Part shown: piece after piece, positions 7,723 through 60,750 of the stretch | How the letters are laid out: each line of letters begins with the position of its first letter | How positions within the stretch are numbered: the first letter of the stretch is position 1 | Assembly (NCBI RefSeq): GCF_006345805.1 | Contig: NC_042997.1 | Span: forward strand, 97,278,001 to 97,342,000 | Direction of reading: 5' to 3' | Length of the DNA stretch: 64,000 nt | Source of the DNA: Octopus sinensis | Lineage: Eukaryota | Translations under genes and position numbers: made by a program | The notes under the pieces: model-generated | The model's input: the letters and a program-made list of their open reading frames with translations, nothing else | Databases searched by the model: none | What the model was told of the DNA's origin: nothing

Positions 7723-9288
7723 TTGCGGCCAAAATGTTCAGAACGGCATTGTTTTCGTCAGAAAAGTAAGTATAAGTTTTTATCAAAGTAATTTTATATT
7801 CTATAATTTTCACAGATAATAAATACAATATTAGTTGTTATTGTCTAGGATTTTGGTGTAATTTGAGAGGATAACACAAAAGTTATGGATGATTTAGTGA
7901 TTTACTGCAAAACCCATGGCGGCCAAAATGATCAGAACGGTTGAAAAAATAATAAAATAATCAAGAATGACAGAGAATACTGGAATTATTTAATATTTAG
8001 AGTGAAGCCCTTTAGCTTCAATCACACTCTGACATCTTTGACTGCATGAGGAAATTAAATTTTCAATTTCTTGCTGGGTGATCTTATTCCATTCTTCCTG
8101 AAGGGCATTCCATAATTGCTCAGTTGTCTTAGGATTTCTGGCATTCGAACGTTCCTCTAGAATATTCCATACATTTTCAATAGGATTGAGATCTGGGCTT
8201 TGAGCAGGCCAATCCATAATAATAACCTTTTCAGCCTTGAGGAAGTTCATGACCACCTTAGCCTTGTGACATGGGGCATTGTCCTGCATGAATATGGGTG
8301 GTCGCTTAGTTGAATTTCTCAGCACAGGCAAGACATGATCTTTTACAAGTTGTTTATAAACTCCTGCATTTACCTTTCCATGTAATCGCACCAAAGGGCC
8401 CACACCATCTCCAGATATCATCCCCCAAACCATGACACTTCCTCAGCCGAATTTAACACTAGTCTTAAGGCATTTAGGCAACAATTTTTCACCTACTTTT
8501 CGACGAACGTACCTTTTCCCATCTGTGAGCCAAATAACAAACTTAGATTCATCACTGAAATGCACCGTTTGCCATTTTTCTTGAGACCACAACACATGTT
8601 CGGTTTCAAAGGTAAGACGACACTTTTTATTCTTGGAGCTGATCAGTGGCTTCACTGCAGGTGCTCTTGCTTGTAGGTCATGTTCAACTAAACGACGAGA
8701 CAGTTTTTCGAGATAAAGTTTTCTTCAATACAATGCTCATTTTCCGAGAAACAGCAGCAGCAGTTTTAAATCTGTCCTTCTTAACCAACTTTACCATAGC
8801 ACGATCTTCTCTGTTGGTCGTTTTTCTTGGCCTACCTGTAAACTTTCTTGCTTCACACGAACCACAATCATCGTAGACCTTAAGAATACCGTGTACAACA
8901 CTTTTTGACTTGTTAACAATCTTTGCAATAGATCCAATACTTAAATTATCCTTCCTTCGAAGCTTAATAATCTGCTGACGAATTGGTAACGGAGTAAGTG
9001 GCATTATATTAACAAAGTACACTGCAAATATTCTTACTAATGTTTAGTAAACGAACCATCACGTAAACAAATTCAAAACATTAGAGTTCGCCGGTTAAAT
9101 ATACTAAAACACGGAGTAAAAGCAACCGTTCTGATCTTTTTGGCCGCCATGGGCTTTGCAGTAAATCACTAAATCATCCATAACTTTTGTATTATCCTCT
9201 CAAATCACACCAAAATCTCAGGCAATAACAAATAATATCTACTTTTCTGACGAAAACAATATCGTTCTGAACATTTTGGCTGCTACTG
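7720..9288 (-). mobile_element. Tc1-family DNA transposon (DD34E) with IR/DR-type long TIRs, inserted in (TA)n
   Basis: ta|cagttgcggccaaaatgttcagaac ... gttctgaacattttggctgctactg|ta; each TIR holds an inner direct repeat (gcggccaaaatgatcagaacgg at about 7920 and its inverse at about 9125-9148). Confidence 0.95.
7990..9022 (-). pseudogene. Tc1 transposase, disrupted
   Basis: Three ORF pieces: paired-like HTH plus GRPRKT, FSDESKF, then VWG, QDNAPCH and WPAQSPDLNPIENVW; 34 residues between second D and E. One frameshift near 8697 and an in-frame TGA at 8443-8445. Confidence 0.93.
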
Positions 9289-13729: not shown

Positions 13730-14970
13730 CCTCCTTCTTGCCAAAGTGGATAGATTGCCATTACAGTGGCGTCTTCAGAAATAGCATCAACACTGCTAGA
13801 CGGCGGCAGAACAGTCCATTCAACATTTAAGCTTCCCCTTAACATCAGCCGTGTTGAAAATCCTACCACCAATATAAACAAGAATTCTGATGAGGCATTT
13901 GTCTTTCAAAAATGCAAATTGATTGTCTGGGACGAGGCAACAAGAATGCACTTAATGCAATCAACACAATGCTACAAGACCTGCGCTCCAATTCTAAACC
14001 GTTCGGAGGCGTCGCTATTTTTCTTGCTGACTACTTTCGTCAAACCTTTCCTATTATCACAAAAGGCACACCAGCTGATGAATTAAACGCTTGCCTTAAA
14101 AATTATCATCTTTGGCGCTCTGTCCAGTCGAGAATGTTAACCATAAACACGCGTTCCATTCTCCACCAACAAGACGATAACAATTCCTTTGCTTCAAAGT
14201 TATTGGGTGTCGGTAATGAGAGCTTACCACACGACGAAAAACGTTTGGCTGACTTAAGTTATATCGGTAACTACGTCTCTAGCCCTGAGGAGCTATGCAC
14301 AACAGTTTACCCGAACCTCTCTACCAATTACATCAGTCGTGAATGGATGTGTGAAAGAGCCATCTTAGCTCCAGCAAATGCCACCGTCCAAGCCCTAAAC
14401 ACATATCTGCTTCGTCAACTTCCTACCCAAGAGCGATGCTATGCTTCCGTTGATTCAGTTACTGATCCAACACGAGTAACGTTTCTCCCAACAGAGTTTT
14501 TAAACTCACAAGAACCATCGGGATTGCCACCGCATAAACTTAGCCTTAAACTTGGTTGTCCTATTATACACTTGGGGAATCTGGAGCCTCCTCGGCTTTG
14601 CAATGGCACACGTTTGGCTGTTAAGCAAATGTTGGCTAACGTTCTCGAAGACACAATCATCACAGGAAAAGGCACTGGCGACTCTGCTTTTATTCCCCCG
14701 ACTGACTTATTCCGACTGACTGTTTTTGCGATGAAAAAAGTCCAATTCCCCATTCAATTAAGCTTTGCTATGACCATTAACAAAGCCCAAGGCCAGTCAC
14801 TAAAAGTGATTGAGCTGGACCTCAATACACCATGCTTTTCACACGGACAGCTGTACGTGGGGTGTTCCAGAGTTGGAAACTCGGCCAATCTCTTCTTCTA
14901 CACTCAAGAAAGATTGACAAAAAACGTGACTTACAAGGCAGCCCTCCAATATTTTATTCCTTTGAGTTGA
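13730..14970 (+). pseudogene. Helitron Pif1-like (SF1B) helicase, 5'-truncated, one frameshift near 13935
   Basis: ASSEIASTLLDGGRTVHSTFKLPL, LIVWDE, KPFGG..FRQTFP, AILAP, FLNS.EPSGLPPHKL.LK.G.PI, LCNGTRL, QFPIQLSFAMTINKAQGQSL, FSHGQLYVGCSRV. Confidence 0.92.
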
Positions 14971-16430: not shown

Positions 16431-16868
16431 GGATCTTTTCGGTTTGAACGGCAGTTTTTTCTAGCGGTTTCATATGAAATTGTTACCCATAATTATGACC
16501 CTAGTATCGATCTATTGCATTTCAATCTGTTTTAGGGTTAGGGTTAGTTAGAGTTAGTTAGGGTTAGGGGTGGGAGGAAGGGTATCTTTTTTTCTTCAGA
16601 AATGTAAATAAACCCAATCTGTTTCTTAAACGAGGGACATTTTCATACGGCACAGAATGTTTTCACCTCAATAGACGTCATTGATTGGTTGAAATTGCAG
16701 AAATTGAAGAAGAAAAACAACAAATATCTTACAAACTATAGAATTTTCTCAATAAAGCCAAGAGAAAAAGATGTTTTATAAACACATTCTACCAGTATAC
16801 GAAGTTTAAAAGTGTTTAGTTACGTGGAAATTATTTTTAAAAAACTGCCGTTCAAACCGAAAAGATCC
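16431..16868. mobile_element. MITE with about 30-bp TIRs and internal TTAGGG-like repeats
   Basis: ggatcttttcggtttgaacggcagtttttt ... aaaaaactgccgttcaaaccgaaaagatcc; degenerate (TTAGGG)n near 16532-16570. Confidence 0.85.
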
Positions 16869-31322: not shown

Positions 31323-32090
31323 GTTTGTCCGTGATTGTCAACGATGACCAAGGTCAGCACGTAAAAGAAGATGGATCGCGATGTGTCCAGCTGTGGTCGA
31401 TAAATGCAGTTCGGTGCGTGGTTAGACGGCTTTGTCGTTGAACGAGTAGTAGTGGTCTACTAAGCCTGAAGGCAAGGATCTGACTGTGAAGTTATGCAGT
31501 TCACATTTCCTTTGTGCTTCTGCAATCCTGTTTTCGTAGGAGATGGCAGCTCTGTTGGTGCAGCTCTGTTGGTGCAGCTTCGCCAGGTAGGGCGATCCTG
31601 TGCTTGTATTTCCCAGGAATCGGGGTTGATTTCAAAGCAATTCAATGAGGCTTTGAGAAGATCATTGAATCGCCTTTTTTGTCCACCTGGTGTGCTCTTA
31701 CCTTCCGCAGGTTCATTGTAAAACAGTCTTTTGGAGAGTCGTGTGTCAGGCATTCGAGAAAGATGGCCTGCCCACCCGACTTGCGCTCTCCTTAGCAGTG
31801 TGTAAATGTTTGGCAGATCAGCTCGAGAAAGAACCTGTGTTTCTAGGACCTTGTCTTGCCAGATGATTTTCAACAGCTCCTTCAGGAACTTCATGTGGAA
31901 GCGCTTTAGCCTTTTCGCGTGGCGTTCGTAAACTGCCCCAGTCTTGCAGGCATACAGTAGTGTAGGCAGTACAACTCCTTGGTACACCTTCAACTCGGTG
32001 GCCAGACTAATGCCTCTCCTCTCCCACACTGATTCACGTAGCAGCCCTGATGCTGAGCTTCCCTTCGCGATGCGTGTCCTATGAAGAGCC
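31255..32090 (-). mobile_element. RTE (BovB-like) LINE, 5'-truncated, with (TAA)n tail
   Basis: RIAK.SSA.G.LR..VW..RGI...T.LKVY..VVLPTLLYAC.T ... RAQV.WAGHL.RMPD.RL.KRLFY.E...GKSTPGGQKRRF.D.LK; (ATT)n at 31250-31320. Confidence 0.9.
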
Positions 32091-32232
32091 ACTCTAATGT
32101 CTAAAACCACAAATATTACGATAATTTTCACTTCGAATTTTGCGTAAATTGGCGTTGCAAGCAGAAACGGTACAGAAACAATTGTAACTGATCAGTAAAG
32201 ACGTGTTAAAGTATTTCTTTGTCTTATTAGTT

Positions 32233-35545: not shown

Positions 35546-36139
35546 ATGAAAGTTCCTATCAATTCCGTACAAGTCCACATCATCTTCATTCACTCCTTCA
35601 ATGGTGATAGACACATTTTCTTCCTTTTTGAAGTTAAATCTACTCGTATATCTACAATAACAAAACCCATCCACGGCATCTCTAATAAGTATAGCGTTCG
35701 GCTCCCAAGAAATGCATGACGCTCCCTTTCTTGTAATTACTTGTTAGTGAACTTTGACTTTGTGCAATTTACTTGGGAAAATATGCACTCCACGCATGCT
35801 GATGAATGAGGTAACGCCGTCAAATTAGTCATGAATTTTGACAGCCTCTCAAATTTAGTGTGGTCAAGCCAGTCTTTAAGATTGCGTATGGAATACCAGA
35901 ATTCAGGGATGCTTTTTGAGGAAACAAGAATATCTTTGACAGCAATAATAATTCTCTAAATGAGATATAGACAGTGACTGCTCCATAATATAAGGGACAT
36001 TAGCCAACTGAATATGGCTAGGGACAGCGCAGGGTGGTGGGGGTGTCACTGTTGCATTTAGCCCCAGGCGAACATCAACGTCACCAGATAGGCCGACGCC
36101 ATCACGGCGTCCTCTATCTTGCAAAGGGAGATCATTCCC

Positions 36140-36218
36140 CAAGAAGCGGATGCCACACACGGACCTAGGTTTCAAGGTGTATTGCCTATTATCAACGTGT
36201 GGTAGGCACCGCTTCTCG
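36140..36218 (-). ncRNA. Type I hammerhead ribozyme, inverted copy
   Basis: Exact reverse complement of 36366-36444. Confidence 0.82.
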
Positions 36219-36365
36219 ACGAACGACACACCGTGCAAGATATATATAAAGATTTTCAAGTAAATACATTTACTGATTTCGAAAATCTGTTCGACAGCAA
36301 TAATAATTCTCTAAATGAGATATAGACAGTGACTGCTCCATTATCTTGCACGGTGTGTCGTTCGT

Positions 36366-36444
36366 CGAGAAGCGGTGCCTACCACACGTTGATAATAGGC
36401 AATACACCTTGAAACCTAGGTCCGTGTGTGGCATCCGCTTCTTG
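36366..36444 (+). ncRNA. Type I hammerhead ribozyme with U3-A8 core
   Basis: CGAGAAGCGG TGCC TAC CACACG TTGATAA T AGG CAATACA CCT T GAAA CCTAGG T C CGTGTG T GGCA T CCGCTTCTTG: stem I 6+4+10 bp, 3-bp stem II, palindromic stem III, GUC triplet, predicted cut after 36422. Confidence 0.82.
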
Positions 36445-36720
36445 GGGAATGATCTCCCTTTGCAAGATAGAGGACGCCGTGATGGCGTCGGCCTATCTGG
36501 TGACGTTGATGTTCGCCTGGGGCTAAATGCAACAGTGACACCCCCACCACCCTGCCCTGTCCCTAACCATATTCAGTTGGCTAATGTCCCTTATATTATG
36601 GAGCAGTCACTGTCTATATCTCATTTAGAGAATTATTATTGCTGTCGAACAGATTTTCGAAATCAGTAAATGTATTTACTTGAAAATCTTTATATATATC
36701 TTGCACGGTGTGTTGTTCGT

Positions 36721-36799
36721 CGAGAAGCGGTGCCTACCACACGTTGATAATAGGCAATACACCTTGAAACCTAGGTCCGTGTGTGGCATCCGCTTCTTG
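36721..36799 (+). ncRNA. Type I hammerhead ribozyme, tandem copy
   Basis: Identical to 36366-36444, offset 355; predicted cut after 36777. Confidence 0.82.
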
Positions 36800-37763
36800 G
36801 GGAATGATCTCCCTTTGCAAGATAGAGGACGCCGTGATGGCGTCGGCCTATCTGGTGACGTTGATGTTCGCCTGGGGCTAAATGCAACAGTGACACCCCC
36901 ACCACCCTGCCCTGTCCCTAGCCATATTCAGTTGGCTAATGTCCCTTATATTATTAAGAATATCTTTATATTGCCGAAATAATCTCCACTCACTGTCTAG
37001 TTCATCAAGTGTGTTTTCTGGTGCAATTGCTGGAAAGTTTAATGCCAAGGGAATTATAGACTGAGGAGAGTTAGTGAGATCGCGTGCTACTTTTGGATCA
37101 AGTATTTCTAAGAGGGCAAACTACTCCAGCTTCATCGAGAGGAAAGCGCATTTCTATTTGAGAGCATAATTCTATTTTAAAATGTTTGCAATCAGTTTTG
37201 AATCTAGCTGAGTCACCAACGATGGGGTTTTGTTCGAGATATCTCATTGCGCATCCATCGAGGTAAATGTCACTCATATCTTTGTGGTTTGTTGTATTAT
37301 TAAGATCAATATCTGATCATTTAGATACAGCTAAACCATTCTCATTTATAAAGCAACTAAGGATATTTTTATATTCACTGGATATAAGTATATGCAACAG
37401 ATGCTATCAAAAGTGTTCCGATTGAAACTCGACATCAAGAGCATTTACTTTTTTTAATATATAATGTAAGAGCAGCACGTGCTTCATCCCTTTGTTAATC
37501 ATTATTTCATAGATCCTTTTTTGGTCTGTACACTTTTTCTACTTTAACCACTGACTGAAAATAAAGTACAGGGGCATCCCACTATTCAATTATAACATTA
37601 ATTACATTTTCACGTGATAACCATCTAATTTGCAAAAGCTTTGGAATCTTGTTTTCTTTTGTGCCAACAATACTCTCTATCATATTGAAGTCATTTTGAC
37701 GTTTGCTGCTTCAAGAAAAGCAAAAAGTTAAGTCCTTTAAAAAGGACTCGAGATACGAAGGTA

Positions 37764-39360: not shown

Positions 39361-40403
39361 TAACACATTCACTGCATGACTTGAACAAAGTGCAAACGAA
39401 TGGCAAGCACAGCCTATCGTAAACAGTCGGAATATCGTTTCTCAATAACTTTTGAAACCCGCTCTTGTTACCCATCATTGTTAAGCAATCATCGCTGACG
39501 AATCCAAGTATGTTGCTCATAGATACATCTTTTGTAAGCGTAGTCTTGACAGCATCGTACAAACCCTGAGATGAACCATTTTCTTCTACAATTGCATCTA
39601 GAGAGCATCCTTGACATTAAGCGATTGTTCATAAAAAAAAGCGAACAACTATTGCTAAGATTTGTATCACTGAGATGTCCGTACTCTCATCTCTCAATAA
39701 TGAAAACTTTTGTTTCTTGAGAATTTCCAAGATTTCATTTTGTTCATAATGTGCAATTCCGTCTAGCATAACGTACGTTAATTTTTTTTTTTTTTTTCGT
39801 TTGCAGATTTTTAGCTATTTCACTATCGGGAAAGGCCTTTTTAGAAATTTCAGCCAAGTGATTTATATGGGTGAAAGGCATGTGATGTTCAGCAAAATAA
39901 CCTGTTAGTAGCAAGTCTGCCTTAGTTACTTTTTCATTTAATGTATCATCTGGTTTTTTTTGTTTTTTTTTAAATAAATGAATCTAATTTAATAGCAGAT
40001 TCCGCACAATCAAAAGCTTTCTTTTGTTTGGCAGTGTTTTTATGAGCTAACAGCATTGATTTGTTAGCATTTTTCAACACAGCGTTGCAACAAAAGCAGT
40101 AGCAGGTGTCCGGATTTTTATCATCTTGCCTTAATCAGTATTCTCCGACCACGACTTCTTAAAATGTTGGGGGTACCACTTCCTCTTTTGGGACACACTA
40201 TTGTCTGCCATTACTTTACAAAGGGTTACAAAACAAAAACACACACTTAAAATGTTGTTAAACAAATTTTAAATCGCGAGTATCAATTGAAGCGTACACC
40301 ATCAACACAGTCATGCTGTCAACTGACGGTGTCAAGAGTTTCAGACAAGTATACAAGCAGCCACCGACGCGTTGTAACTTGTTGTCCGGTATAAACAAAT
40401 AAC

Positions 40404-42303: not shown

Positions 42304-42660
42304 CATTTTTCTCTTTTCTTCCCACAAGTCTCAGAAGCCTTTTAAATGGTCATAAGTACAGTCTTCACTCCTCACTAAAACATTAAAAAAAGTGATTTCA
42401 GAATTAGGCACAAAGCCACGCATTTTTCTCTTTTCTTCCCACAAGTCTCAGAAGCCTTTTAAATGGTCATAAGTACAGTCTTCACTCCTCACTAAAACAT
42501 TAAAAAAAGTGATTTCAGAATTAGGCACAAAGCCACGCATTTTTCTCTTTTCTTCCCACAAGTCTCAGAAGCCTTTTAAATGGTCATAAGTACAGTCTTC
42601 ACTCCTCACTAAAACATTAAAAAAAGTGATTTCAGAATTAGGCACAAAGCCACGCATTTT
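42304..42660. repeat. Three identical 117-bp tandem repeats
   Basis: catttttctcttttcttccc starts at 42304, 42421 and 42538. Confidence 0.92.
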
Positions 42661-43047
42661 TAAGAAAAGAAGAACGAAATTCTGTAATGTTCCTCAATAA
42701 TATTTATTACCAACAAAAATTATGTGAAATAACTGAGCTCCAACAAAATGTAATGCTTTAAGCTCCACAATGTTAAGCAATTGAAAGAGGAATCTTCCTT
42801 GAAATAAGATACCTGCCAGTCTGTTACAGGTGGCATTTTCCTTAACACCTACCATCTATTTATAATTGTTTGGTACACTGATGTAATATAGTATTATATA
42901 CCATGGCCATGCATAGAGATATAATCAACAGAGCCTCTATACAGTTACATTTAACCTGCTAGAAATAGCAACCCAATACAAGAGACCTGAACTTGTTTCA
43001 ACCTGATATTGAAACCAGTTTGGAGGCCCACACATACAGAGCATACC

Positions 43048-43652
43048 TATTTCTTTACTACCCACAAGGGGCTAAACACAGAGGGGACAAACAAGGACAG
43101 ACAAATGGATTAAGTCAATTATATCGAACCCAATGCATAACTGGAACTTAATTTATCGACCCCGAAATGATGAAAGGCAAAGTCAACCTCGGCAGAATTT
43201 GAACTCAGAACGTAGCGGCAGACGAAATACCTATTTCTTTACTACCCACAAGGGGCTAAACACAGAGGGGACAAACAAGCACCGACAAATGGATTAAGTC
43301 AATTATATCGACCCCAGTGTGTAACTGGTACTTAATTTATCGACCCCGAAAGGATGAAAGGCAAAGTCAACCTCGGCGGAATTTGAACTCAGAACGTAGC
43401 GGCAGACGAAATACCTATTTCTTTACTACCCACAAGGGGCTAAACACAGAGGGGACAAACAAGCACCGACAAATGGATTAAGTCAATTATATCGACCCCA
43501 GTGTGTAACTGGTACTTAATTTATCGACCCCAAAAGGATGAAAGGCAAAGTCAACCTCGGCAGAATTTGAACTCAGAACGTAGTAGTGGTAGACGAAATA
43601 CTGCTAAGCATTTCATCCAGCGTGCTAACAATTCTGCCAGCTCGCCACCTTA
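43048..43652 (-). mobile_element. SINE family B tandem trimer (184-bp period) under a single 14-bp TSD
   Basis: atacctatttc at 43043, 43227 and 43411; ATACAGAGCATACC at 43034-47 and 43653-66. Confidence 0.9.
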
Positions 43653-46880: not shown

Positions 46881-49160
46881 GTTTAACGTCCGCTTTCCAT
46901 GCTAGCATGGGTTGGACGGTTCGACTGATGACTGGCAAACTAGATGGCTGTACCAGGCTCCAATCTGATCTGACAGAGTTTCTACAGCTGGATGCCCTTC
47001 CTAATGCCAACCACTCTGAGAGTGTACTGGGTGCTTTTACATGCCACCGGCATGAGGGCCAGTCAGGTGGTACTGGCAACGGCCATGCTCAAATGGTGTT
47101 TTTTACGTGCCACCTGCACAGGAGCCAGTCAAGTGGCACTGGTAACCACCTTGCTCGAATGTTTTTTCACATGCCACCGGCACAAGTGCCAGTAAGGTGA
47201 TGCTGGTAATAATCATGCTCAAATAGTGCTTTCTACATGCCACCGGCATGGAAGTCAGTTAGCTGCTCTGGCAACGATCATGCTCGGATGGTGCTCTTAG
47301 CGCTCCACTAGCACTGATGCCAGTCATTGAATTTGATTTTGATTTCACTTGCATCAACAGGTCTTCACAAGCAGAATTTAGTATCCAATGAAGGAAAGGT
47401 ACGCATAAGTGGGCTGGTTACACACCTGTCATAGGCCACGAGGTTATGGTCTCATTTGGCTTGCCAAGTCTTCTCAAGCACAGCATATTTCCAAAGGTCT
47501 CAGTCACTAGTCATTGCCTCAGTGAGGCCTAATGTTTGAAGGTCATGCTTCACCACTTCATCCCAAGTCTTCCTGGGTCTACTTCTTCCACAGGTTCCCT
47601 CAACCACTAGGGTTTGGCACTTTTTCACACAGCTATCTTCATCCATTCTCACCACATGACCATACCAGTGCAGTTGTCTCTCTTGCACACCACATCTGAT
47701 GCTTCTTAGGTCCAACTTTTCTCTCAAGGTACTTACACTCTGTCTAGTATGCACACTGACATTACACATCCATCAGAGCATACTGGCTCCATTCCTTGCA
47801 AGCTTACGCATGTCCTCAGCAGTCATGGCCCATGTTTCCCTGCCATGTAGCATGGCTGTTCGTACACATGCGTCATACAGTCTATCTTTTACTCTGAGCA
47901 AGAGGCCCTTTGTCACCAGCAGAGGTAGGAGCTCTCTGCACTTTGCCCAGGCTATTCTTATTCTAGCAGCTACACTTTCAGAGCATCCACCCCAGCTATT
48001 GACTTGGTCACCTAGGTAATGGAAGCTGTCAACTACTTCTAGTTTTTCACCTTGGAATGTGACAGAAGTTGTTCTCTGCACATTTCCAGTGTTTATTGCT
48101 CCTGAGTTAGCCTTCCTTTGATATTTCTGCACCTCTTACGTGTTCATAGCTTACACTGGGTACATCTTAAATATTTTCTACCTACACCTTTTCTACAGAT
48201 CGAGCAGGGCTATCTACCTGAAGGGATTTGTGGTTTGTCTGCCTTCCTACTGATTAAGACTTTGGTTTTACCTAGGTTGACTCTAAGGCTCTTTGATTCT
48301 AATCCTTGCTTCCACACCTGAAACTTCTCCTCTAGTTCTGATAGTGACTCAGCAATAAGACCAAGGCCATCAGCATAGAGGAGCTCCCAGGGGCATCCTG
48401 TCTTAAATTCCTCTGTTATTGTCTAGAGGACTATAATAAATAGGTAAGGGCTGAGGACTGAACCTTGGTGGACCCTTACCTCTACCTGGAATTCTTTACT
48501 CGTTGCCAACCCTCACCTTACTGGCAGCGTCCCTGTACATGGCTTGCACAGCTCTCACTAACCATTCATCTATCCCTAGTTCCCTCATTGACCACCAGAT
48601 AAGGGGTCAGAGGACCCTGTCGAAGGCTTTCTCCATGTCAATGAAAGCCAGGTATTTCTACTGCAGTTGTCTTACCAGAAATATAGCATCAGTGGTGCTT
48701 TTCCCTGGCACAAACCCAAACTGCATCTCATCCAGACTGACCCTCTCTCTAATTAGTTGGGTTATAACCCTCTCCGTGACTTTCATTACCTGATCCAACA
48801 ATTTGATACCTCTGTAATTATTTGTATCTAATGCGTCACCTTTACCTTTGTAGCAGTTGACTATGGTGCTGCTACACCAGTCATTGGGTATGACTCCTTC
48901 ATGTATCACCTGATTGACTATAAGGGTGACTAGACTATAGCCTACTCCACCAGATATTTCAAGCATCTCTGCGATGATTCCTGATGGGCCGGATGCTTTC
49001 TCTGTCTTCATGCCCTTAATTGTTTTATCTACCAAGGTACTGTCAATTCGGATAACTGGTCCCTCTCTTGGGTCGACTTTTGGCAGACTCTCTTTCTCCC
49101 ATTCATTCTCTTCATTTAGCAACCTTCCATAGTGGTGTCTCCAAGTCTCTCTGCAACCTC
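46846..49160 (-). mobile_element. RTE-clade LINE, 5'-truncated, RT pseudogene plus 3' UTR and (GAT)n tail
   Basis: NYRGIKLL, QFGFVPGKSTTDAIF, QGS.LSP, LLYAD, RL.WYGHV.RM, GRSRPRKTW; (CAT)n at 46848-79; 3' UTR has roughly 60-bp tandem units at 47030-47290. Confidence 0.9.
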
Positions 49161-59207: not shown

Positions 59208-60750
59208 TAGTTTTATATTTATAATGCGCTTTCACTTCACTACCTAGTGCAGCTCTGTGTGCCTTGGGTATGTGCTGTGGTTTGCTGAAATTTGGGAGGA
59301 AGGTGACTAGTTGATTACATCAACCTCAGTATTTCACTGGTACTTGATTCATCAACCCTGAAAGGATGAAAGGTAAAGTCAATCTCAGTGAAATTTGAAC
59401 ACAGAATGTAAGGCAGCAAGCTGGCAGAATCATTAATACACTGGACAAAATGCTTAGTAGCATTTCATCCTTCCTTACGTTCTGAGTTCAAATTCTGCCG
59501 AGGTCAACTTTGCCTTTCATCCTTTCAGGGTCAATAATTTAAGTACCAGCTGAGTACTGTAGTCAATGTAATCGACTTACCCCATCTCCACCCAAATTTC
59601 AGGCCTTGTGCCTATAGCAGAAAAGATTATTATTATTATTATTATTGTTATTATTATTATCATTATTATTATTATTATTTGAGTTCAAATTCCACCAAGG
59701 TTGACTTTGCCTTTCATCCTTCAGACTTGATAGAATAGGTACCAGTTGAGTACTGGGGTTGACGTAATCGATTTAGCCCCTTCCCAAAATTTCAGGCCTT
59801 GTACCTATAGTACAAAGAAATATTATTATTATTGTTGTTGTTGTTATTAAGGCAGCAAGCTGGCATTTCATCCGTCCTTGTCTTCTGAGTTCAAATTCCA
59901 CCAAAGTCGATAAATCAAGTGCTATTTGTGTAATAGACTGATCTAATGGATTGGCCCCCTTCCACAAAATTTCAGGCCTTGTGCCTATAGTAGAAAGGAT
60001 CATTATTATTATTATTAAGGCAGCAAGCTGGCAGAATCATTAGCTGGACAAAATGCTTAGTGGTATTTCACCCATTGCTACATTCTGAGTTCAAATTCCA
60101 CTGAGATCGACTTTACTTTTCATCCTTTCCAGACACAACACAGACCACACTTTCAGATTTTTAAAATAAAGTTTTCAGAAATAACCCAATAAGTTTACCA
60201 TTAATTCTATGAAATATTCACAGTTCCTGCTAGTTATTATTATTGTTATTATTAAGGCGACTAGTAGAAACTCACTATGGAGCAAGTGGGCAGCAGGAGA
60301 AATTTTCAGAGAAAGAACTCCCATCAAGCGTTTGGTCCATCAGTTCCTAATATTCTAAGGAGCCAGGCCTACCTAGGTCATGACTCCTGGGTGTCCTACT
60401 TTTTTGAAATACCACCTTTAATGGGGATTGAACTAGGAACCATCAGGTGATTTTATATCTCTGAACCGTGGTGCATGTATCTCGGTCATGAACACCACAG
60501 GAAAAATTTGCTCTGTTGATATATTTTAAACAGGGTTTTCGTTCAACTATTTTTACTGGCTCAATGTTAAGTGATGTCCAAACCGCTTCATGGTATTTCG
60601 TCTATCTTTACATTCTGAGTTCAAAATCTTCCCAGGGTCCACTTTGCTTTTCATCCTTTCAGGGTCAATATAATAAGTACCAGTTGAGTGCTGTAATTGA
60701 TTTACCCCTGCCTCTGAACCTGTTGGCCTTGTGCCAAAATTTGAAACCAT
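57715..60750 (+). mobile_element. Dense array of diverged SINE family B copies with (TTA)n tails; includes a 540-bp tandem duplication at about 58150-59200
   Basis: Repeated gagctggcagaatc..ttctgagttcaaattc..ctttgcctttcatcc bodies; lines starting 58141 and 58681 align with offset 540. Confidence 0.85.

What the first reader, a model, noticed from the sequence alone, without database searches (positions are those of the whole stretch)
35926..36967. Retrozyme-like ribozyme concatemer inserted into a hAT transposase with a 12-bp TSD
Seen: a 355-bp unit is present as 404 bp inverted plus 613 bp forward. I noticed only a few substitutions between copies, and each full unit has an identical hammerhead. 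The block is flanked by AAGAATATCTTT, and removing it restores the hAT frame (EWRLFRQYK|DILVSSK). Known: non-LTR retrozymes of other animals (Schistosoma Sm-alpha, newt/axolotl satellite 2, cnidarian repeats) are short tandem units with type I hammerheads that self-cleave to monomers, circularise and are re-inserted by a borrowed reverse transcriptase. Inferred: this is a young insertion of such an element, predicting a 355-nt linear/circular RNA (36423-36777). I cannot tell whether this family is already described in cephalopods.
Basis: partly seen in the sequence, partly recalled or inferred. Interest (0 to 1): 0.95.

Follow-up and report, generated by a model that had tools for sequence, protein, structure and literature searches.

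The report
Octopus hammerhead retrozyme, Penelope-style insertion
A young 1-kb insertion in a dead octopus hAT transposon consists of copies of a 355-bp non-coding repeat carrying a variant hammerhead-ribozyme motif, and its layout points to Penelope-like retrotransposon enzymes as what inserted it; it is a new example of a known kind of element, not a new kind.

Summary
A 1018-bp block (35938-36955) lies between two perfect copies of AAGAATATCTTT. It consists only of a 355-bp unit: 404 bp inverted, then 613 bp forward. Three single-copy substitutions separate the copies. Octopus bimaculoides hAT paralogues read straight across the junction with no gap, so this is a precise insertion with a 12-bp target-site duplication.

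Each unit has a type I hammerhead architecture: a 6-bp helix I with a UAC bulge, a 4-position helix II, the palindrome ACCUAGGU as helix III, and a GUC cleavage triplet. The core is not canonical, however. C3-G8 is replaced by U3-A8, a covariation already reported in Penelope-like element (PLE) hammerheads. G10.1-C11.1 is replaced by U.U. No Rfam hammerhead model matches, even at E<=10. Self-cleavage and the predicted 355-nt circular RNA remain untested.

New here: the layout matches the published PLE insertion signature. It has a head-to-head inverted copy next to a direct partial tandem, a short duplication of an AT-rich target, and one outer end 47 nt longer than the other (a "tail"). The outer ends fall at unit positions 177 and 224, not at the hammerhead site. 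Best reading: a non-LTR retrozyme mobilised by PLE enzymes. Copy number, expression and the PLE partner could not be tested.

The parts
35926..35937 (.). Left copy of the 12-bp target-site duplication AAGAATATCTTT (encodes KDIL of the hAT on the minus strand)
35938..35984 (-). 47-nt extension ('tail') at the 3' end of the inverted copy: unit positions u178-u224 in reverse complement. This outer end (u224) lies 47 nt beyond the outer end of the forward copy (u177).
   Evidence: ungapped mapping
35985..36341 (-). Inverted full unit (u176...u355, u1...u177; 357 nt). It is joined head-to-head to the forward copies at 36341/36342.
36156..36201 (-). Hammerhead-like motif of the inverted copy; predicted cleavage between 36162 and 36161
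36342..36599 (+). Forward 5'-truncated unit (u275-u355, u1-u177; 258 nt). It lacks the AT-rich segment u178-u274.
36383..36428 (+). Hammerhead-like motif 1: CACACG-UUGAUAA-UAGG(CAAUACA)CCUU-GAAA-CC(UA)GG-UC|CGUGUG; predicted cleavage after 36422
   Evidence: extended helix I 36360-36450, z = -5.5
36423..36777 (+). Predicted 355-nt monomer between two hammerhead cleavage sites (unit u1-u355). 64% of its bases are paired when it is folded as a circle.
36600..36954 (+). Forward full unit in insertion phase (u178...u177), ending at the right outer end u177
36738..36783 (+). Hammerhead-like motif 2, identical to motif 1; predicted cleavage after 36777
36955..36955 (+). Single T that belongs neither to the unit nor to the duplication (untemplated or filler base)
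36956..36967 (.). Right copy of the 12-bp target-site duplication
35680..35925 (-). Decayed hAT transposase, C-terminal part downstream of the insertion (VSSKSIPEFWYS...CTKSKFTNK*...)
36968..37273 (-). Decayed hAT transposase part upstream of the insertion (...FALLEILDPKV...EWRLFRQY), with stops further upstream. A DUF4371-like N-terminal piece lies at 39362-39769.

Best explanation
The block is one retrotransposition event of a non-autonomous, non-coding 355-nt element of the 'non-LTR retrozyme' kind in an Octopus genome.

What the sequence shows:
- A precise insertion with a 12-bp duplication of an AT-rich target.
- Nothing but unit sequence between the duplications.
- Near-identical copies, differing at 3 sites.
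- A type I hammerhead-like motif in every unit.

Inferred mechanism:
- An RNA of tandem units, or a circular monomer copied round and round, was reverse-transcribed at a staggered double nick by the RT/GIY-YIG endonuclease of an autonomous Penelope-like element.
- Both 3' ends of the cut target served as primers. The bottom strand started at unit position u177 and made the forward 613 nt. The top strand started at u224 and made the inverted 404 nt.
- The two cDNAs were then joined head-to-head.
- The two start sites, 47 nt apart, correspond to the PLE 'tail'. They lie in or at the edge of a 98-nt AT-rich module (u178-u275) that I take to be the RT-recognition region.
- The hammerhead (U3-A8 variant, palindromic helix III, probably active only as a dimer or with protein help) would cut multimeric transcripts into 355-nt monomers that a tRNA ligase can circularise. 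It did not define the ends of this insertion.
For: Insertion and duplication:
-.
- Copies differ by 3 singleton changes in 1017 bp. That equals roughly 1 My at the octopus rate implied by PMC13282606 (JC 0.09 = 25 My).

Hammerhead-like motif:
- 9 of 11 invariant core positions are kept, and the two that differ are the C3-G8 pair changed to the isosteric U3-A8. That covariation is reported for about 1,300 motifs of Schistosoma PLEs (PMC4209133).
- The architecture equals the published metazoan type I description: helix I 6 bp, helix II 4 positions, helix III short with a palindromic loop (ACCUAGGU is self-complementary).
- A relaxed descriptor hits only these 3 sites in the window, against 0.04 hits per shuffled window.
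- The monomer is highly paired, z = -3.65.

PLE signature:
- Published PLE insertions are partial tandems with an adjacent inverted 5'-truncated copy, an 8-10-bp duplication, and a 30-40-bp tail at one end (PMC8557442; PMC3846280).
- Purified PLE protein nicks AT-rich DNA, extends BOTH strands, and starts RT at two internal RNA sites whose spacing is the tail. Hammerhead cleavage is not needed for insertion (PMC11167929).

Here:
- A head-to-head inverted copy sits next to a direct partial tandem.
- The duplicated 12-bp target is 10/12 A/T.
- The outer ends, u177 and u224, are 47 nt apart.
- The inner end of the inverted copy (u176) coincides with the outer end of the forward copy (u177).
- Neither outer end is at the ribozyme site.

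Available partners:
- O. vulgaris has 31 recently active PLE families.
- Retrozymes are proposed PLE dependants (PMC7229834; 10.64898/2026.07.22.740005).
Against: - There is only one locus. No second copy exists in the 64-kb window, and no cephalopod genome could be searched, so the two 'start sites' rest on n=1.
- No Rfam hammerhead hit even at E<=10.
- The G10.1-C11.1 pair, described as highly conserved even in PLE mini-hammerheads, is U.U here, so the ribozyme may be weak or dead.
- The tail is 47 nt against the published 30-40.
- The left target end shows 8/14 identity to the unit sequence next to u224 (p about 0.015). PLE RT initiation was reported as not homology-driven.
- No PLE ORF is in the window.
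- Homology of the unit to an octopus PLE pLTR is untested.
Confidence: 0.6

Rival explanations
1. The element and the retrotransposition are the same, but a LINE (for example L1-Tx1, RTE or CR1 of octopus) inserted it by classical target-primed reverse transcription with 'twin priming'. The second target end anneals internally to the RNA by microhomology and produces the inverted 5' segment.
For: - A 12-bp duplication and a 5' inversion with a small internal loss (50 nt, u225-u274) are exactly the twin-priming pattern (own knowledge: Ostertag & Kazazian 2001).
- The left target end matches the unit sequence beyond u224 at 8/14 positions (p about 0.015).
- LINE RT fragments lie in the window, and LINEs are the most active octopus retroelements.
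Against: - There is no poly(A), microsatellite or LINE-like 3' tail at the right end.
- The right junction has no microhomology (4/14).
- The 3'-terminal base of the left primer is mismatched.
- The inner end of the inverted copy coincides with the outer end of the forward copy (u176/u177), about a 1% coincidence that twin priming does not predict.
- Hammerhead-bearing tandem elements are otherwise linked to PLEs.
Confidence: 0.2
2. A PLE-type or SINE-like non-autonomous repeat whose hammerhead is only a decayed relic. It does not self-cleave and makes no circular RNA, so it is a pLTR-derived minisatellite rather than a functional retrozyme.
For: - No Rfam hammerhead hit at any threshold tried.
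- U.U replaces the conserved G10.1-C11.1 pair (for its conservation).
- All four deviations are G/C-to-A/U changes.
- PLE mini-hammerheads cleave poorly in vitro, and hammerhead cleavage is dispensable for PLE insertion.
Against: - The two core changes are a matched pair (U3-A8), not random decay.
- All other invariant positions, the GUC triplet, the 8-nt palindrome, the 6-bp helix I and the UAC bulge are intact.
- The insertion is young, so its source copy was recently active with this very motif.
Confidence: 0.13
3. DNA-level event. Fragments of a satellite array, or of an extrachromosomal circular DNA of three units, were captured by end joining at a staggered chromosome break, with one fragment inverted. 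No reverse transcription is involved.
For: The two segments plus the missing 50 nt add up to 3 units + 2 nt (1067 nt), and both ends fall at the same unit phase. A three-unit circle opened at one point would give this.
Against: - A clean 12-bp duplication of an AT-rich site is the signature of endonuclease-made staggered nicks.
- The model needs two breaks in the circle, 50-nt resection and two ligations.
- The layout reproduces a known retroelement signature.
Confidence: 0.05

Closest known systems
Non-LTR retrozymes of metazoans (Cervera & de la Pena 2020, PMC7229834), especially the 350-390-bp Mytilus galloprovincialis repeats
   Same: - A short, non-coding, <50% GC unit in head-to-tail copies, with a type I hammerhead per unit.
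- A highly self-paired monomer.
- A duplication longer than 4 bp, and no LTR.
- The unit length (355 bp) falls in the mussel range.
   Different: - The hammerhead core is U3-A8 with U.U at 10.1/11.1 and is invisible to Rfam.
- Expression, circularity and copy number are unknown.
- I found no cephalopod family reported in the searchable literature.
- The inverted copy and defined outer ends have not been described for retrozymes.
Penelope-like elements: insertion architecture (Arkhipova 2013 PMC3846280; Craig 2021 PMC8557442; Frangieh 2024 PMC11167929)
   Same: - A direct partial tandem with an adjacent head-to-head inverted copy.
- A short duplication of an AT-rich target.
- An optional extension ('tail') at one outer end.
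- A hammerhead inside the repeated part, with insertion ends not at the hammerhead site.
   Different: - No RT/GIY-YIG ORF: the whole unit is 355 bp.
- The tail is 47 nt rather than 30-40.
- The duplication is 12 bp against the 8-10 reported in Adineta.
PLE hammerheads with the U3-A8 core covariation (Cercyon elements of Schistosoma mansoni; Cervera & de la Pena 2014, PMC4209133)
   Same: - The same isosteric replacement of the C3-G8 pair.
- A palindromic helix III, suggesting action as a dimer.
   Different: - The PLE mini-hammerheads have almost no helix III, a bulged base after A9 and a conserved G10.1-C11.1 pair.
- This motif has the 'canonical' metazoan 6-bp/4-bp helix I/II layout, and U.U at 10.1/11.1.
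Schistosoma Sm-alpha / newt satellite 2 type I hammerhead repeats
   Same: - Tandem short repeats with a type I hammerhead.
- From memory of the Schistosoma ribozyme: a UAC bulge immediately 5' of a 6-bp helix I and a CAAAUA-like loop 2 (here CAAUACA).
   Different: - There is no sequence homology outside the motif.
- The core is non-canonical here.
- The comparison is from memory and is a lead, not a test.
L1 5'-inversion by twin priming
   Same: An inverted 5' segment, a forward 3' segment, a small loss at the junction, and a duplication of 7-20 bp.
   Different: There is no poly(A). The ends fall at phase-matched unit positions. The element belongs to a hammerhead/PLE-associated class.

Membership tests
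Non-LTR retrozyme | Short (about 170-400 bp) non-coding unit in head-to-tail tandem | tested here: met
   355-bp period, 1.7 forward and 1.1 inverted copies. The only long stop-free frame (131 codons) has no homologue.
Non-LTR retrozyme | A type I hammerhead ribozyme in each unit | tested here: inconclusive
   The type I architecture is present in all three copies, and a relaxed descriptor is specific to them. The core is U3-A8 with U.U at 10.1/11.1, and no Rfam hit was found.
Non-LTR retrozyme | No LTR, GC < 50%, target-site duplication longer than 4 bp | tested here: met
   The insert is unit sequence only. GC is 45%. The duplication is a perfect 12 bp. PBS and PPT motifs were not searched for specifically.
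Non-LTR retrozyme | Highly self-paired monomer RNA | tested here: met
   Linear fold MFE -112.7 kcal/mol, z = -3.65. 64% of bases are paired in the circular fold.
Non-LTR retrozyme | Many dispersed genomic copies | not testable with these tools
   No cephalopod genome collection is available. There is no other copy in the window, and no match in the metagenome or viral collections.
Non-LTR retrozyme | Expressed as self-cleaved linear and circular RNA | not testable with these tools
   No transcriptome data or bench assay is available.
Hammerhead ribozyme (Rfam Hammerhead_1/3/II/HH9/HH10) | Score at or above the family gathering threshold | tested here: not met
   No hit at gathering, and none at E<=10 on 1.3 kb or on the 71-nt motif alone.
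Hammerhead ribozyme | Invariant core C3 U4 G5 A6 G8 A9 / G12 A13 A14 / A15.1-U16.1, H17 | tested here: inconclusive
   The sequence reads U3 U4 G5 A6 U7 A8 A9 ... G12 A13 A14 A15.1 ... U16.1 C17. The only deviations are the paired positions 3 and 8, as in the natural U3-A8 variants.
Hammerhead ribozyme | G10.1-C11.1 closing pair of helix II | tested here: not met
   U opposite U. The pair is described as highly conserved.
Hammerhead ribozyme | Three helices around the core, type I topology (helix I open; II and III capped) | tested here: met
   Helix I is 6 bp and extends to about 29 bp. Helix II is 3 bp plus U.U with a 7-nt loop. Helix III is A-U plus 2 G-C pairs with a 2-nt loop, and the 8-nt palindrome allows a dimer.
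Hammerhead ribozyme | Site-specific self-cleavage | not testable with these tools
   Needs in vitro transcription.
Penelope-like element insertion signature | Direct partial tandem with an adjacent inverted 5'-truncated copy, head-to-head | tested here: met
   Inverted copy at 35938-36341, forward copies at 36342-36954. Literature definition.
Penelope-like element insertion signature | Optional 30-40-bp 'tail' at one outer end (two alternative RT start sites) | tested here: inconclusive
   The outer ends, u224 and u177, are offset by 47 nt. This is a single locus, and the tail is slightly longer than published.
Penelope-like element insertion signature | Short duplication of an AT-rich target | tested here: met
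   12 bp, 10/12 A/T. Published values are 8-10 bp and AT-rich cleavage.
Penelope-like element (autonomous) | ORF with telomerase-like RT and GIY-YIG endonuclease | tested here: not met
   The insert has no such ORF, and no PLE ORF was seen among window ORFs of 130 aa or more. It is therefore at most a non-autonomous dependant.
Penelope-like element (non-autonomous derivative) | Sequence homology of the unit to the pLTR of a resident PLE | not testable with these tools
   No octopus PLE sequences are available. Recently active PLEs exist in O. vulgaris according to PMC13282606.
hAT transposon (host of the insertion) | hAT C-terminal dimerisation domain | tested here: met
   Pfam Dimer_Tnp_hAT is only sub-threshold (E = 0.0077). 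Identity is 73-84% to O. bimaculoides proteins named 'HAT C-terminal dimerisation domain-containing'. The copy is decayed by stops and frameshifts.

The most novel reading that the evidence does not exclude
This locus may be a near-pristine 'footprint' showing how animal retrozymes move. The model is dual-strand target-primed reverse transcription by a Penelope-like element enzyme. It would start at two fixed internal sites (u177 and u224) of a dedicated AT-rich module, on a multimeric or circular RNA, independently of hammerhead cleavage. It would also define the first cephalopod retrozyme family, and its active master copy would carry a hammerhead with both U3-A8 and a U.U closing pair. That would extend the range of natural core variation that still supports propagation.
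Probability: 0.4. Interest if true: 0.6.

Novelty: new member of a known kind. Interest (0 to 1): 0.45.

Why it matters
Animal retrozymes are abundant sources of small circular RNAs, but how they are copied back into DNA is still inferred only from co-occurrence and pLTR phylogeny with Penelope-like elements, so far in vertebrates. A young insertion with both junctions, the duplication and the empty-site sequence intact gives structural evidence for the Penelope route. It also yields testable positions for RT initiation. It extends retrozymes to cephalopods, whose 'unclassified SINE/unknown' repeat fraction is large. Finally, it offers a natural hammerhead variant (U3-A8 plus U.U) for biochemical testing. 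If transcribed through, the head-to-head copies would form a 314-bp double-stranded RNA hairpin, a potential substrate for the very active cephalopod RNA-editing and small-RNA pathways.

Tried and rejected
- Rfam at gathering threshold on the whole window, at E<=10 on 1.3 kb, and at E<=10 on the 71-nt motif: no ribozyme of any class.
- The sub-threshold MIR6274 and mir-210 hits are only the inverted repeat and the long helix I. Rejected as miRNAs.
- I tried to find more copies through spurious ORF calls, using the 131-codon stop-free frame as a protein query. No hits.
- Exact 22-mers of the motif in JGI metagenome contigs (two scans) and in viral contigs: none.
- nhmmer and word-7 blastn of the unit against the rest of the window: nothing.
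- Look-ups to identify the source contig or a DNA-level paralogous empty site failed.
- Thermodynamic folding and co-folding do not reproduce the three-way junction or a helix III dimer. This is uninformative, because the hammerhead core and a 2-nt loop lie outside the nearest-neighbour model.
- Missed-adapter palindrome (assembly artefact): rejected. The junction is not mirror-symmetric (u176 abuts u275, with a 99-nt 'loop'), and the flanks with the duplication are intact.
- Snap-back self-priming, or a switch of the RT onto its own cDNA: rejected. That would place u177 plus flank at the far end of the inverted segment, not u176 at the junction.
- A second ribozyme on either strand that could explain ends at u177/u178: none found.
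Full report
**1. What is there**

The sequence 35926-36967 consists of these parts:
- AAGAATATCTTT at 35926-35937.
- A 1018-bp block.
- AAGAATATCTTT again at 36956-36967.

Repeat analysis and an ungapped mapping onto a 355-nt unit give the internal layout. I number the unit from the predicted ribozyme cut, so u1 = 36423.
- 35938-36341 is the reverse complement of u176...u355, u1...u224 (404 nt).
- 36342-36954 is u275...u355, u1...u355, u1...u177 in forward orientation (613 nt).
- 36955 is one extra T.

The copies differ at only three unit positions (u134, u144, u292). Each change is present in one copy only. No other copy of the unit, even diverged, exists in the 64-kb window.

**2. A genuine, precise insertion**

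On the minus strand the flanks encode a decayed hAT transposase.
- Joining the flanks with one copy of the 12-mer gives ...DELDSEWRLFRQYKDILVSSKSIPEFWYSIRNLKD...
- A search with that joined peptide returned four Octopus bimaculoides 'HAT C-terminal dimerisation domain-containing' proteins and one ENA protein. Identity is 62-84% and E-values range from 1e-41 to 1e-58.
- In the alignment they read EWRLFRQYKDIPVSSKSIPEFWYS across the junction with no gap.
- The window encodes KDIL twice, at 36967-36956 and 35937-35926. The paralogues carry KDI(P/L) once.

So the 12 bp are a target-site duplication, the insert boundaries are exact, and the host is an Octopus.

Three singleton differences in 1017 bp imply an age of the order of 1 My. 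This uses the rate implied by a recent O. vulgaris repeat study (JC 0.09 = 25 My; PMC13282606) and assumes the copies were identical on arrival.

**3. The 'hammerhead'**

No Rfam family reaches its gathering score anywhere in the window. No ribozyme family appears at E<=10, either in 35800-37100 or in the 71-nt motif searched alone.

Read by eye, each unit contains:

...GCC-UAC-CACACG / UUGAUAA / UAGG-CAAUACA-CCUU / GAAA / CC-UA-GG / UC | CGUGUG-U-GGC...

This has the topology and dimensions published for canonical metazoan type I hammerheads: helix I 6 bp, helix II 4 bp, helix III 1-2 bp with a small palindromic loop (PMC4209133).
- Helix I here is 6 bp, followed by an internal loop and about 23 further pairs (z = -5.5).
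- Helix III is A15.1-U16.1 plus two G-C pairs around a 2-nt loop.
- ACCUAGGU is a perfect palindrome that could form an 8-bp helix III in a dimer.
- The cleavage triplet is GUC.

Of the invariant core, only positions 3 and 8 differ. They differ together: C3-G8 becomes U3-A8.
- That covariation was found naturally in PLE hammerheads of Schistosoma, with about 1,300 motifs.
- The 3-8 pair can be swapped with partial retention of activity. C3G/G8C rescue was shown again for a PLE hammerhead in PMC11167929. Data on U3-A8 itself I know only from memory.

The second deviation has no precedent I could find. The helix II closing pair G10.1-C11.1 is described as highly conserved, and here it is U opposite U.

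I wrote a relaxed descriptor with these rules:
- either core pair allowed;
- the closing pair left free;
- at least 5 of 6 pairs in helix I;
- 3 inner pairs in helix II;
- 1-3 pairs in helix III;
- UH at the cleavage site.

It hits only the three copies on both strands of the window, against 0.04 hits per shuffled window. The strict canonical descriptor hits nothing. The descriptor is post hoc, so this shows non-randomness, not activity.

Verdict on the motif: it is a hammerhead by architecture and descent, of unknown catalytic competence. It most likely needs a dimeric form or protein assistance, as reported for PLE hammerheads.

**4. The unit as an RNA**
- The unit is 45% GC.
- As a monomer it folds into a branched, largely paired structure: -112.7 kcal/mol with z = -3.65 as a linear molecule, and 64% of bases paired as a circle.
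- It has three compositional parts: u1-177 (53% GC), u178-275 (29% GC) and u276-355 (49% GC).
- Its length falls in the 350-390-bp range of mussel retrozymes, which accumulate as circular RNAs (PMC7229834).

**5. What the layout of the insertion says**

Neither outer end of the insert is at the ribozyme site.
- The forward array ends at u177, next to the right duplication.
- The inverted copy ends at u224, next to the left duplication. That is 47 nt further along the unit.
- The inner end of the inverted copy is u176, the same unit phase as the forward outer end. A coincidence within 2 nt has a chance of about 1%.
- The forward array begins at u275.

In insertion phase the block reads: [47-nt extension][full unit], both inverted, joined head-to-head to [258-nt 5'-truncated unit][full unit]. 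The two segments plus the missing u225-u274 add up to 3 units + 2 nt.

This reproduces the published structure of Penelope-like element insertions.
- In Adineta, two direct pLTRs plus an adjacent inverted pLTR are flanked by 8-10-bp duplications, with a 31-bp tail on one inverted pLTR (PMC3846280).

Biochemistry of a purified PLE protein explains the pattern (PMC11167929).
- The protein cleaves AT-rich DNA and extends both strands.
- It starts reverse transcription at two adjacent internal RNA sites whose spacing is the tail.
- It does not need hammerhead cleavage.

The target here is 10/12 A/T. I therefore infer dual-strand target-primed reverse transcription by a PLE enzyme, with start sites at u177 and u224 in or at the edge of the AT-rich module. 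The template would be a multimeric transcript or a circle copied repeatedly.

Suitable partners are reported. O. vulgaris has 31 recently active PLE families with 336 young insertions. Retrozymes have been proposed as PLE dependants on the grounds of co-occurrence and, in Xenopus, pLTR phylogeny.

**6. Rivals**
- LINE twin priming gives the same gross pattern: an inverted 5' part, a small loss, and a duplication of 7-20 bp. It is favoured by 8/14 identity between the left target end and the unit sequence beyond u224 (p about 0.015). Against it, there is no A-rich or LINE-type 3' tail, the right junction has no microhomology (4/14), and the phase coincidence is unexplained. The 8/14 similarity also fits the reported tendency of PLE endonuclease to recognise its own tail-like sequence.
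- Capture of satellite or extrachromosomal circular DNA fragments would explain the three-unit sum. It would not explain the clean duplication.
- The hammerhead may be a dead relic, in which case no circular RNA is made. This affects the 'retrozyme' label but not the insertion mechanism.
- A missed-adapter palindrome and snap-back models do not fit the junction geometry.

**7. Comparison and novelty**

The element works like, and very probably is, a non-LTR retrozyme.
- Defining features met: a short tandem non-coding unit, no LTR, low GC, a long duplication, and a self-paired RNA.
- Inconclusive: a functional type I hammerhead.
- Not testable here: dispersed copies and circular RNA.

I found no mention of retrozymes or hammerheads in cephalopods in the searchable literature, including the 2026 O. 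vulgaris repeat annotation. This is absence of evidence only.

The finding is therefore a new member of a known kind. Two points have some specialist interest: an insertion footprint that ties a retrozyme to the PLE integration mechanism, and an unusual core variant.

**8. Limits**
- Everything about mechanism rests on one locus.
- No eukaryotic genome or transcriptome could be queried.
- The comparison with the Schistosoma ribozyme (UAC bulge, loop 2) is from memory.

Noticed in passing
window 36423-36777 (unit), + strand: The unit has a 131-codon stop-free frame (393 nt), longer than the unit itself, so it runs more than once round a tandem or circle. It has no ATG near its start and no homologue in 5.8 billion proteins. 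It is probably chance (rough expectation about 0.05).
   Followed up: partly
window 36600-36697 and equivalents (u178-u275): A 98-nt AT-rich module (29% GC, against 49-53% in the rest of the unit) is bounded by the insertion breakpoints. It contains TATATATA (u264-271), which reads the same on both strands and resembles the TATA box described in rotifer PLE pLTRs. It is a candidate promoter and RT-recognition region.
   Followed up: partly
window 35929-36242 / 36342-36655: The head-to-head copies form a 314-bp, 98%-complementary inverted repeat with a 99-nt spacer. If transcribed it would be a long dsRNA hairpin. It also explains a spurious sub-threshold Rfam MIR6274 hit at 36198-36380.
   Followed up: partly
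window 42304-42661: A perfect (100% identical) tandem of a 117-bp unit, 3.1 copies.
   Followed up: no
window 43043-43583 and 59483-59849: Tandem or partial-tandem arrays of 184-bp (2.9 copies, 96%) and 196-bp (1.9 copies, 79%) units. Their nature was not determined.
   Followed up: no
window 13912-14970 (+): An intact 352-aa ORF with PIF1 helicase domains (Pfam PIF1 2e-14, Pif1_2B 4e-12), as in Helitron-type elements. No identical product is on record.
   Followed up: partly
window 7990-8433 (-), 31460-32131 (-), 48658-49122 (-): A Tc1/mariner-type DDE_3 transposase fragment and two ORFs I read as LINE reverse-transcriptase fragments. For 48658-49122, Pfam RVT_1 is only weak and sub-threshold. 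For 31460-32131 there is no Pfam hit, and the assignment is by eye. The window is a TE-rich, microsatellite-rich region of 31-45% GC.
   Followed up: partly
window 16537-16567: A short interstitial telomere-like repeat (GTTAGGGTTA, 3.1 copies).
   Followed up: no
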